The notes: a model not told the origin generated them from the sequence alone. DNA of 64,000 nucleotides from Octopus bimaculoides (GCF_001194135.2 NC_068983.1:94123348-94187347); one strand, 5' to 3'; positions 63,325 to 63,481 are shown, counted from the stretch's first letter. Made by a program: numbers and translations.

Positions 63325-63481
63325 AGTAATAAAGTTAATGTCTGGTCACAGAGTGACCAATGGTTTCGCATCCACGAAGGCCGTAGCTTTGTGGACGACT
63401 CATCAGACTGTAGTCCGAAGACAAATTTGTCTGCAGCCTTCGTGGATGCGAAACCATAGACCAGACATTAACTTTATTACT
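63325..63481. repeat. Short fold-back element
   Basis: agtaataaagttaatgtctggtc...tggtttcgcatccacgaaggc is mirrored by gccttcgtggatgcgaaacca..gaccagacattaactttattact. Confidence 0.88.
63347..63414 (-). ncRNA. Type I hammerhead ribozyme, intact core
   Basis: Minus strand reads tacagt-CTGATGA-gtcgtccacaaagcTACGgccttcgtggatgc-GAAA-ccattg-GTC-actctgtg. Extended stem II capped by c(UACG)g, 3-bp stem III, and a bulged stem I of 3+3 bp. CpGs are undecayed. Confidence 0.72.

What the first reader, a model, noticed from the sequence alone, without database searches (positions are those of the whole stretch)
63347..63414. Intact hammerhead with a cUACGg-capped long stem II, 1.1 kb upstream of RABIF on the same strand
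Seen: full core, GUC site, bulged stem I and an extended stem II closed by a UNCG tetraloop. CpGs are intact, so the copy is young or unmethylated. It truncates the hAT element end at 63481. Inference: it could cut upstream or readthrough transcripts entering the RABIF promoter.
Basis: partly seen in the sequence, partly recalled or inferred. Interest (0 to 1): 0.72.

Follow-up and report, generated by a model that had tools for sequence, protein, structure and literature searches.

The report
Retroelement-derived hammerhead ribozyme copy in octopus
The hammerhead ribozyme motif upstream of the octopus RABIF gene is real and has an intact core, but it looks like a leftover of a mobile retroelement insertion, one of several in this window, and nothing here shows that it regulates RABIF.

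Summary
On the minus strand at 63414..63347 there is a complete type I hammerhead: CUGAUGA, G10.1-C11.1, GAAA, and a GUC site cut before 63354. Helix II is 12 bp with a cUACGg cap, and helix I has a C·C mismatch or bulge. A descriptor search finds it once, against 0.007 hits per shuffled window.

The window is Octopus bimaculoides. The motif belongs to a repeat family with three insertions here. Arms A and B form a 155-bp head-to-head palindrome. Copy C next to it is dead. An older dead pair, D, lies at 53.6-53.8 kb and is shared with O. vulgaris and O. sinensis. Compensatory changes among the copies support all three helices.

The 263-bp block C+A+B (63217-63479) sits inside the 3' inverted repeat of a decayed hAT transposon and is absent from the orthologous RABIF loci of three other octopods. 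Two unrelated hammerheads in the window also sit in head-to-head palindromes. This architecture matches insertions of Penelope-like elements and their retrozyme derivatives.

Helix III is minimal, so the ribozyme is probably dimer-dependent. The flanking palindrome (-87 kcal/mol) outcompetes the ribozyme fold (-10 kcal/mol). A role in RABIF regulation is unsupported. This is a new member of a known kind.

The parts
63347..63414 (-). Hammerhead A, with an intact core. Helix I 5' strand 63414-63407; CUGAUGA 63406-63400; helix II 63399-63368 (UACG loop); GAAA 63367-63364; helix III 63364-63356; C17 at 63355; predicted cleavage between 63355 and 63354; helix I 3' strand 63354-63347.
63325..63425 (-). 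Arm A of the palindrome: a 101-nt copy running from the 5' end TTTGTCT... to the 3' tail ...CATTAACTTTATTA(CT).
63426..63479 (+). Arm B, the inverted copy. It equals arm A with two substitutions and two deletions. One deletion (about 35 nt) removes helix I 5' strand, CUGAUGA and the 5' half of helix II. The other (about 11 nt) removes the GUC site. It is not a ribozyme.
   Evidence: copy D retains the 11-nt segment
63217..63324 (+). Copy C, an older-subfamily copy of the same hammerhead family, tail-to-tail with A. Its core is dead (CUGAUAA; U10.1/U11.1). Helix I is GGGAU/AUCCC and helix III is A-U, C-G, U-A. A 20-nt TA-rich spacer follows.
63209..63216 (-). The last 8 bp (AAACACTG) of the hAT 3' terminal inverted repeat, separated from the rest of the element by the 263-bp block 63217-63479.
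63480..64000 (-). 3' part of a decayed FAM200/ZBED5/SCAND3-like hAT transposon. It continues beyond the window to L004 4841, where the 5' inverted repeat CAGAGTTTCTCAACGGGAGCC lies. The transposase C-terminus ends at about 63748.
62920..63106 (+). Octopus SINE copy ending in (AC)n(AT)n. Four more copies occur in the window.
62080..62723 (-). RABIF exon 1 (ATG at 62251, donor after 62084) plus the upstream block conserved in other octopods (to 62723 in O. vulgaris and O. sinensis, to 62373 in Argonauta). This is the likely promoter.
53610..53758 (+). Pair D, an old head-to-head pair of the same hammerhead family. D1 (53663-53758, + strand) has a dead core (CUAACGA, AAAA). D2 (53653..53610, - strand) starts in helix III. 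(TA)n flanks the pair. Orthologous copies exist in O. vulgaris and O. sinensis.

Best explanation
The motif is the ribozyme of a hammerhead-bearing retroelement: a Penelope-like element (PLE) terminal region, or a short non-autonomous derivative of the retrozyme kind.

Proposed history (inferred). An older copy, C, landed inside the 3' inverted repeat of a hAT transposon. Later a younger, CpG-rich subfamily copy was inserted at C's 3' tail as a head-to-head pair, A and B. Such a pair is expected when both target DNA strands prime reverse transcription of the element RNA. Arm B then lost the ribozyme core and the cleavage site by deletion, which left one intact hammerhead.

In its home element the ribozyme would process multimeric element RNA. 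It would most likely act as a dimer, through its minimal and nearly palindromic helix III.

Here it is a solitary relic, and the palindrome locks it into a long hairpin. Self-cleavage of host transcripts is therefore expected to be weak or absent. Its position 1.1 kb upstream of RABIF is incidental.

Shown: the motif, the family, the covariation, the palindromes, the insertion into the hAT inverted repeat, and lineage specificity. Inferred: PLE-type mobilisation, dimer dependence, and lack of host function.
For: Motif and chance.

Family. Copies A, B, C and the D pair occur in one window, and D is orthologous in two other species. A versus C: 92.7% of cells are paired, with 5 compensatory pairs spread over all three helices; slid controls give 24-46% paired and 0-1 compensatory pairs. 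Five sequences: 7 pairs with compensatory changes against 1.9±1.1 in shuffles, 0 of 500 reaching the observed value.

Architecture. The arms share 3' ends that face outward, and no target-site duplication is seen. The same head-to-head design recurs around two unrelated hammerheads in the window and around one in O. sinensis. Most of these lie next to (TA)n.

Lineage specificity.

Literature. Metazoan PLE hammerheads have a long helix II with an unpaired base at its 5' end, a short helix I and a palindromic minimal helix III. They act as dimers, show low in vitro activity, and occur as dual motifs on opposite strands (PMC4209133). PLE insertions are strongly 5'-truncated, often carry an adjacent inverted 5'-truncated copy, and favour microsatellites (PMC8557442). 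A purified PLE protein nicks and extends both strands. Reverse transcription starts a short distance 3' of the hammerhead site, and the endonuclease recognises the element's own tail (PMC11167929). PLEs have been recently active in Octopus (PMC13282606). Animal retrozymes appear to be PLE derivatives (bioRxiv 10.64898/2026.07.22.740005).

Thermodynamics.
Against: No reverse transcriptase or GIY-YIG ORF was found linked to any copy. tblastn with the Poseidon_Ac protein found none in about 280 kb of octopod DNA, so the link to PLEs rests on architecture and literature alone.

Arms A and B both begin at the same nucleotide (TTTGTCT), and D1 starts at a similar point. That fits full-length copying of a roughly 100-nt RNA better than random 5' truncation of a long element.

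The hAT target (GGTTGAG|AAACACTG) is not AT-rich.

The C plus A/B arrangement needs two events at one spot.

No Rfam hammerhead model recognises the motif.

Nearest-neighbour energies ignore hammerhead tertiary contacts and co-transcriptional folding, so some cleavage cannot be excluded.
Confidence: 0.7

Rival explanations
1. One reading: an active cis-acting hammerhead that cleaves upstream or read-through minus-strand transcripts before they reach the RABIF promoter, acting as a transcriptional insulator.
For: The core is intact and CpG is not depleted. The motif is on the same strand as RABIF and 1.1 kb upstream. The region 61.5-64 kb has raised CpG observed/expected, as expected for a hypomethylated divergent RABIF/FAM192A promoter domain where upstream transcripts are plausible.
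Against: The motif is absent from the orthologous loci of three other octopods. It is part of a transposable-element block inside another transposable element. The palindrome and a local GGUCAC/GUGACC hairpin sequester helix II, the GAAA box and the GUC site; the computed hammerhead fraction is 1e-9 for the 73-mer and 7e-26 within the palindrome. Helix III is of the dimer type and there is no partner on the same strand. PLE-type hammerheads cleave poorly in vitro (PMC4209133), and no RNA ends were seen at the cut site of an active PLE (PMC11167929).
Confidence: 0.06
2. A self-contained mini-element: a non-autonomous RNA of about 100 nt (18-nt leader, hammerhead, 30-nt tail), retrozyme- or SINE-like, copied full length by a PLE or other reverse transcriptase. 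On this reading it is not a truncated end of a long element.
For: Arms A and B share the same 5' nucleotide at the centre of the palindrome. D1 starts at a similar TTTGT and C starts 5 nt before the core. No RT ORF is nearby. Retrozymes have been proposed to be PLE derivatives (bioRxiv 10.64898/2026.07.22.740005; PMC7229834).
Against: Known non-LTR retrozymes are 170-400-nt head-to-tail tandem repeats. No tandem repeat exists here. The unit boundaries do not coincide with the self-cleavage site. Only four copies were available.
Confidence: 0.2
3. A MITE or foldback DNA transposon, or palindromic filler DNA from repair of a break at the hAT end, that merely carries hammerhead-like sequence.
For: The 155-bp unit has long inverted termini of 23 and 27 nt. 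It lies at a hAT inverted repeat, a site the transposase cuts through hairpin intermediates (established hAT biochemistry; my own knowledge).
Against: No target-site duplication is seen. The arms differ by deletions of exactly the ribozyme parts. The same family occurs as an unequal-arm pair elsewhere (D) and as a single copy (C). Covariation shows selection on the RNA fold. Three unrelated hammerheads share the same architecture.
Confidence: 0.04

Closest known systems
Hammerheads in the pseudo-LTRs of Penelope-like elements (Cervera & De la Peña 2014, PMC4209133; Poseidon_Ac, PMC11167929)
   Same: Type I topology, helix II longer than usual with an unpaired base near its 5' base, a conserved G10.1-C11.1, a short imperfect helix I, and a minimal near-palindromic helix III (ACCAUUGGU). 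The motif lies tens of nucleotides from the 3' end of the insertion. Inverted pairs, dual motifs on opposite strands, and heavy 5' truncation are also shared.
   Different: No RT/GIY-YIG ORF is linked here. Helix II is longer still (12 bp, UACG-capped). The unpaired base lies after 10.1 rather than between 9 and 10.1. The copies appear to have a fixed 5' end.
Animal non-LTR retrozymes with type I hammerheads (Cervera & De la Peña 2020, PMC7229834)
   Same: Short, non-coding, AT-rich elements that carry one type I hammerhead with a weak helix III. They are thought to depend on another element's reverse transcriptase.
   Different: Retrozymes are 170-400-bp head-to-tail tandem arrays that yield circular RNAs. 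Here the copies are about 100 nt, solitary or head-to-head, and never tandem.
Newt satellite 2 and Schistosoma Sm-alpha hammerheads
   Same: Genomic type I hammerheads in repeats, with a 2-3-bp helix III that favours dimeric cleavage.
   Different: Those have 4-bp helix II and conserved loop 1 / loop 2 contacts, and Rfam RF00163 recognises them. This motif gets no Rfam score.
Amniote intronic hammerheads HH9/HH10 (Rfam RF02275, RF02277)
   Same: A hammerhead at a fixed place in a host gene region.
   Different: HH9 and HH10 are ultraconserved across species. This copy is lineage-specific. In this window only the separate motif at 52.6 kb resembles HH9 (28.5 bits).

Membership tests
Hammerhead ribozyme (type I) | Invariant core C3 U4 G5 A6 N7 G8 A9 ... 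G12 A13 A14, with an A15.1-U16.1 pair and an NUH cleavage triplet | tested here: met
   CUGAUGA, GAAA and GUC are all present in the right order.
Hammerhead ribozyme (type I) | Three helices around the core, with G10.1-C11.1 closing helix II and helix I open-ended | tested here: met
   Helix II has 12 bp, helix III has 3 bp plus a triloop, and helix I has 5 of 6 positions paired.
Hammerhead ribozyme (type I) | Helices supported by compensatory changes among relatives | tested here: met
   A versus C gives 5 compensatory pairs. Five sequences give 7 pairs, with 0 of 500 shuffles reaching that number. Only 3 insertions are independent, and alignment A3 was fitted to the model.
Hammerhead ribozyme (type I) | Match to a curated Rfam hammerhead covariance model | tested here: not met
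   No hit at the gathering score or at E<=10, even on 91 nt. The likely reasons are the 32-nt helix II and the minimal helix III.
Hammerhead ribozyme (type I) | The catalytic fold is accessible in the native transcript | tested here: not met
   The hammerhead fold is -10.4 kcal/mol against an MFE of -22.9 (73 nt). Within the palindrome the MFE is -87.2 and the hammerhead fraction is about 1e-25. Tertiary contacts are not modelled.
Hammerhead ribozyme (type I) | Site-specific self-cleavage | not testable with these tools
   This needs in vitro transcription and mapping of RNA ends.
Penelope-like element (terminal region with hammerhead) | The hammerhead variant typical of metazoan PLEs: long helix II with an unpaired base, short helix I, and a minimal palindromic helix III | tested here: met
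   The sequence was compared with the description in PMC4209133.
Penelope-like element (terminal region with hammerhead) | 5'-truncated copies with a common 3' end, often with an adjacent inverted copy, and no regular target-site duplication | tested here: met
   Pairs A/B and D1/D2 and single copy C show this, and no duplication was found. The published features are in PMC8557442 and PMC11167929.
Penelope-like element (terminal region with hammerhead) | A full-length relative that encodes a reverse transcriptase plus a GIY-YIG endonuclease | tested here: inconclusive
   tblastn with Poseidon_Ac found nothing in the window or in L001-L009. The octopus genome as a whole could not be searched.
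Non-LTR retrozyme | Head-to-tail tandem repeats of 170-400 bp, each with a type I hammerhead | tested here: not met
   Only (AC)n and (AT)n tandem repeats are present, and the copies are inverted or solitary.
MITE / foldback DNA transposon | Terminal inverted repeats flanked by a target-site duplication of fixed length | tested here: not met
   The flanks are ...TATATTAA | ... | CTCAACCT, with no duplication.

The most novel reading that the evidence does not exclude
Octopus genomes may carry mini hammerhead retroelements of about 100 nt, little more than a ribozyme with a short leader and tail. They would be copied full length and inserted as head-to-head palindromes next to (TA)n tracts. On this reading the young, CpG-intact copy upstream of RABIF still cleaves and trims upstream transcripts of a divergent promoter.
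Probability: 0.07. Interest if true: 0.6.

Novelty: new member of a known kind. Interest (0 to 1): 0.3.

Why it matters
Hammerheads tied to Penelope-like elements and retrozymes are already known across animals. A new octopus family therefore mainly extends the catalogue. The literature searches here found no paper describing cephalopod hammerheads.

Three points are useful. First, the case shows how to read such motifs: an intact core near a gene can be a remnant of a transposable element locked in a palindrome. Second, Rfam misses this class entirely. Third, the recurring head-to-head pairs are genomic footprints consistent with the two-strand priming reported in vitro for one PLE. Several short arms end just 3' of helix II, which may say something about how the ribozyme structure affects reverse transcription.

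Tried and rejected
Rfam. A gathering-score scan of the window and E<=10 scans of 601 nt and 91 nt gave no hammerhead hit for the finding. The microRNA-like hits only reflect the hairpin.

Other copies in the window. Pattern search and BLAST found only the local arms. The covariance model was needed to find copy D.

Metagenome scan. The pattern CTAYRGCCTTYRTGGATGYRAAAC gave 0 matches.

Link to a PLE reverse transcriptase. tblastn with the Poseidon_Ac protein found nothing significant in the window or in any fetched locus. A protein search seeded with Poseidon_Ac returned 4593 hits, and none of the 120 listed was from a cephalopod. No octopus PLE could therefore be fetched.

Exact look-up of the ORF that spans the palindrome: not on record. 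The O. vulgaris short isoform was not on record, and the locus was reached through cluster members instead.

I first read C as a CpG-decayed version of A. That is only partly right. C and D share UAAG and UUUAU(G/A)G where A has UACG and UUCGUGG, so A belongs to a different, CpG-richer subfamily.

I also tested whether an ORF starting at the AUG inside CUGAUGA mimics the Poseidon arrangement. The frame stops after 22 codons in A and earlier in D, so I rejected it.

Full report
WHAT IS THERE

The minus strand of 63414..63347 reads ACUACAGU-CUGAUGA-[GUCGUCCACAAAGC-UACG-GCCUUCGUGGAUGC]-GAAA-CC-AUU-GG-UC|ACUCUGUG. Every invariant hammerhead position is present: C3-A9, G12-A14, the A15.1-U16.1 pair, and C17 in a GUC triplet. 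G10.1-C11.1 closes helix II.

Helix II has 12 base pairs, one bulged U, one bulged C and an A·C mismatch, and a C(UACG)G cap. Helix III is only A-U, C-G, C-G with an AUU loop. Helix I is U-A, G-C, A-U, C·C, A-U, U·G, or 3+3 bp with a CU bulge.

A strict type I descriptor finds this site and nothing else on either strand of the window. Dinucleotide shuffles give 0.007 hits per window. Against this, no Rfam hammerhead model scores it: not at the gathering score, and not at E<=10 on 601 nt or on 91 nt.

WHOSE GENOME, AND THE LOCUS

The ORF at 62251 (minus strand) and an exon at about 55.5 kb splice to a 149-aa MSS4/RABIF protein. It is identical to Octopus bimaculoides XP_014788234.1.

The O. bimaculoides chromosome locus (L004) is 100% identical to window 62000-64000 and extends 8.2 kb further upstream. 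Orthologous loci were fetched for O. vulgaris (L002), O. sinensis (L003) and Argonauta hians (L001). The upstream neighbour is FAM192A, transcribed divergently.

Conservation with O. vulgaris and O. sinensis runs from RABIF exon 1 up to window 62723 (90% identity). With Argonauta it runs up to 62373. It resumes only 4.85 kb further upstream. In O. vulgaris that interval is 2.13 kb of unrelated repeat DNA. Everything between 62724 and the equivalent of about 67570, hammerhead included, is therefore lineage-specific.

THE MOTIF IS ONE ARM OF A PALINDROME INSIDE A TRANSPOSON END

Inverted repeats 63325-63347/63459-63481 (23 nt, 100%) and 63360-63386/63431-63457 (27 nt, 93%) surround the motif. 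The symmetry centre is 63425|63426.

Arm A (63425..63325, minus strand) is the full 101-nt copy. Arm B (63426-63479, plus strand) starts with the same TTTGTCT. It carries two substitutions and two deletions. The deletions remove helix I 5' strand, CUGAUGA and the 5' half of helix II, and also the 11-nt segment containing GUC.

Immediately to the left lies copy C (63217-63324, plus strand), tail-to-tail with A. C is about 77% identical to A and has a dead core (CUGAUAA).

To the right, the window carries the 3' part of a decayed hAT transposon of the FAM200/ZBED5/SCAND3 type. A second O. bimaculoides copy (L005) defines the element's ends. The 5' end is CAGGGTTTCTCAAC... and the 3' end is ...TTGAGAAACACTG, with an 8-bp target-site duplication.

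In the window the hAT sequence stops at ...GGTTGAG (63480). The missing AAACACTG is found at 63216..63209, directly beyond copy C. The 263-bp block C+A+B (63217-63479) is therefore an insertion into the hAT terminal inverted repeat, 8 bp from its end. No target-site duplication flanks the block.

IT IS A FAMILY, AND THE RNA FOLD HAS BEEN UNDER SELECTION

Aligned on the hammerhead structure, A and C pair in 92.7% of cells. They show 5 compensatory double changes: 3 in helix I, 1 in helix II and 1 in helix III. With the 3' partners slid by 1-3 columns, pairing falls to 24-46% with 0-1 such changes.

A covariance model built from A and C finds a further copy, D1, at 53663-53741 (35.8 bits, E about 3e-6). 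It also finds orthologous copies at the syntenic position in O. vulgaris and O. sinensis. The family therefore predates the split of these species.

D1 has a dead core (CUAACGA; GAAA changed to AAAA by a CpG transition) and is itself half of a head-to-head pair. The arms are 53610-53653/53715-53758 (44 nt, 86%), and (TA)n flanks the pair. D retains the segment that B lacks, so B's gap is a deletion.

Over the five sequences, 7 pairs show compensatory changes against 1.9±1.1 in shuffles, and 0 of 500 shuffles reach that number. Two caveats apply. Only three insertions are independent, and that alignment was fitted to the model.

C and D share UAAG and UUUAU(G/A)G where A has UACG and UUCGUGG. 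A and B therefore represent a distinct, CpG-richer subfamily.

CpG observed/expected is 0.96 in A and 0.90 in B. It is 0.41 in C, 0.55 in the hAT part, 0.79 in the conserved promoter block and 0.26 for the window. 'Young or unmethylated' is a fair reading. The whole 61.5-64 kb stretch has raised CpG, so low methylation may contribute.

THE SAME ARCHITECTURE RECURS AROUND UNRELATED HAMMERHEADS

A relaxed descriptor run over 217 kb (the window plus L001-L006) gives three distinct hits, all in the window. Block shuffles give 0.43 hits per 217 kb.

The second hit (52634..52596, minus strand) has a 6-bp helix I, a 4-bp helix II and a perfectly palindromic helix III (ACAUGU). It matches Rfam Hammerhead_HH9 at 28.5 bits, E=7e-6. 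It sits at the apex of a 408-bp palindrome with 176-nt arms that are 94% complementary (MFE -334 kcal/mol). That palindrome lies next to a SINE's (TA)n tail and is absent from O. vulgaris.

The third hit (4119..4070, minus strand) lies in a palindrome of about 490 bp. The other arm carries a mutated core, CCGAUAA. Its Rfam support is negligible.

In O. sinensis locus L009, another minimal hammerhead lies at the inner edge of a pair of 121-nt arms that are 98% complementary and are flanked by (TA)n.

In three of the five pairs, the shorter arm begins 2-10 nt upstream of the cleavage site, just 3' of helix II.

HOW IT MOST LIKELY AROSE AND WORKS

The features of this motif are a long helix II with an unpaired base near its base, a short imperfect helix I, and a minimal helix III that is nearly palindromic (ACCAUUGGU against ACCAAUGGU).

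These are the published hallmarks of hammerheads in the terminal repeats of metazoan Penelope-like elements. Those hammerheads are thought to act as dimers, cleave poorly in vitro, and are often found as dual motifs on opposite strands (PMC4209133).

PLE insertions are strongly 5'-truncated, often have an inverted 5'-truncated copy alongside, and favour microsatellites (PMC8557442). A purified PLE protein nicks and extends both target strands. It starts reverse transcription a short way 3' of the hammerhead site, and its endonuclease recognises the element's own tail. Hammerhead mutants still insert, and no RNA-seq ends map to the cut site (PMC11167929).

Two-strand priming predicts what is seen here: head-to-head copies with their 3' ends outward and no regular duplication. 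Tail recognition would explain why the A/B pair landed at the 3' end of copy C.

PLEs are abundant in Octopus, and some are recently active (PMC13282606 and PMC8967140). Animal retrozymes have been proposed to be PLE derivatives.

My best explanation (confidence 0.7) is a relic hammerhead of such a retroelement. What is missing is a linked RT/GIY-YIG ORF. None was found in about 280 kb of octopod DNA, and no octopus PLE protein could be retrieved. A and B also share the same 5' nucleotide. That leaves room for a self-contained mini-element of about 100 nt (rival, 0.2).

IS IT LIKELY TO CUT RABIF-DIRECTED TRANSCRIPTS?

For the isolated 73-mer the hammerhead fold scores -10.4 kcal/mol against an MFE of -22.9. 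The MFE structure pairs the GUC site in a GGUCAC/GUGACC hairpin, and the computed hammerhead fraction is about 1e-9.

A minus-strand transcript entering from upstream contains arm B first. The full palindrome then folds at -87.2 kcal/mol (z = -13.8), and the hammerhead fraction is about 1e-25. These energies ignore tertiary contacts and folding kinetics, so they argue against efficient cleavage without excluding it.

There is no second intact copy on the same strand to form a dimer. B and C lie on the opposite strand and are dead. The block is absent from three related species that keep the RABIF promoter block. I put the insulator reading at about 0.06. Transcription across the site could not be examined.

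VERDICT

The object is a new member of a known kind: retroelement-borne type I hammerheads. It is ordinary in function but cleanly documented.

Its main value is as an example of a class that Rfam misses. It also gives genomic footprints consistent with two-strand priming by PLE-type machinery in cephalopods.

Noticed in passing
window 52423-52830 (hammerhead 52634..52596, minus strand): A second, unrelated type I hammerhead: UUCAGG-CUGAUGA-UGAGCAAUGACUCA-GAAA-CAUGUC|CCUGAA. It matches Rfam HH9 at 28.5 bits, E=7e-6. It sits at the apex of a 408-bp palindrome with 176-nt arms that are 94% complementary, next to a SINE (TA)n tail. It is absent from O. vulgaris and O. sinensis.
   Followed up: partly
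window 3921-4412 (hammerhead 4119..4070, minus strand): A third hammerhead-like motif with a long helix II and a 4-bp helix III, or a 12-bp near-palindromic one. It lies in a head-to-head palindrome of about 490 bp, and the other arm has a dead CCGAUAA core. Only the descriptor supports it (Rfam E=9).
   Followed up: partly
window 53610-53758; L002 14186-14264; L003 14191-14269: An old, dead head-to-head pair (D1/D2) of the same family as the finding, flanked by (TA)n. It is conserved at the orthologous site in O. vulgaris and O. sinensis.
   Followed up: yes
window 53121-53535: Another palindrome of about 415 bp (97-nt arms, 89% complementary) flanked by (TA)n on both sides. The reverse complement of its left arm reads CTGACGATGGCTTAGCTGGCCAAAA...GAGTC, possibly a decayed hammerhead with G12 changed to A at a CpG. 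Not verified.
   Followed up: no
pairs at window 52598/52655, window 53653/53715 and L009 4596/5035: In three of five head-to-head pairs, the shorter arm begins 2-10 nt upstream of the hammerhead cleavage site, just 3' of helix II. This may reflect reverse transcriptase stalling or template switching at the ribozyme, or use of partly processed RNA. It is unexplained.
   Followed up: no
window 63480-64000 and L004 4841-9043; L005; L006: The decayed hAT transposon (FAM200/ZBED5/SCAND3-like) has protein relatives at 65-73% identity in crustaceans (Macrobrachium, Oratosquilla, Palaemon). These rank above most octopus hits, which hints at horizontal transfer among marine invertebrates. A SINE-like insert (L004 7751-8274) interrupts the transposase gene.
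   Followed up: no
L009 5008-5045 and 6662-6688 (O. sinensis): Two minimal hammerhead motifs with palindromic helix III (ACAAUUGU and ACGU) lie 1.6 kb apart on one strand. The first lies at the edge of a pair of 121-nt inverted arms that are 98% complementary, next to long (TA)n tracts, so it looks very young.
   Followed up: partly
window 61500-64000: CpG observed/expected is 0.5-0.9 here, against 0.26 for the window. This is consistent with a hypomethylated domain between the divergently transcribed RABIF and FAM192A genes. It may help explain the intact CpGs in arms A and B.
   Followed up: no
window 63403..63335 (minus strand): The AUG inside CUGAUGA opens a 22-codon frame in which GAA of the GAAA box is a codon, as in the lizard Poseidon element, whose ORF starts in the hammerhead. 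The frame stops in the tail here and earlier in copy D, so this is probably coincidence.
   Followed up: partly
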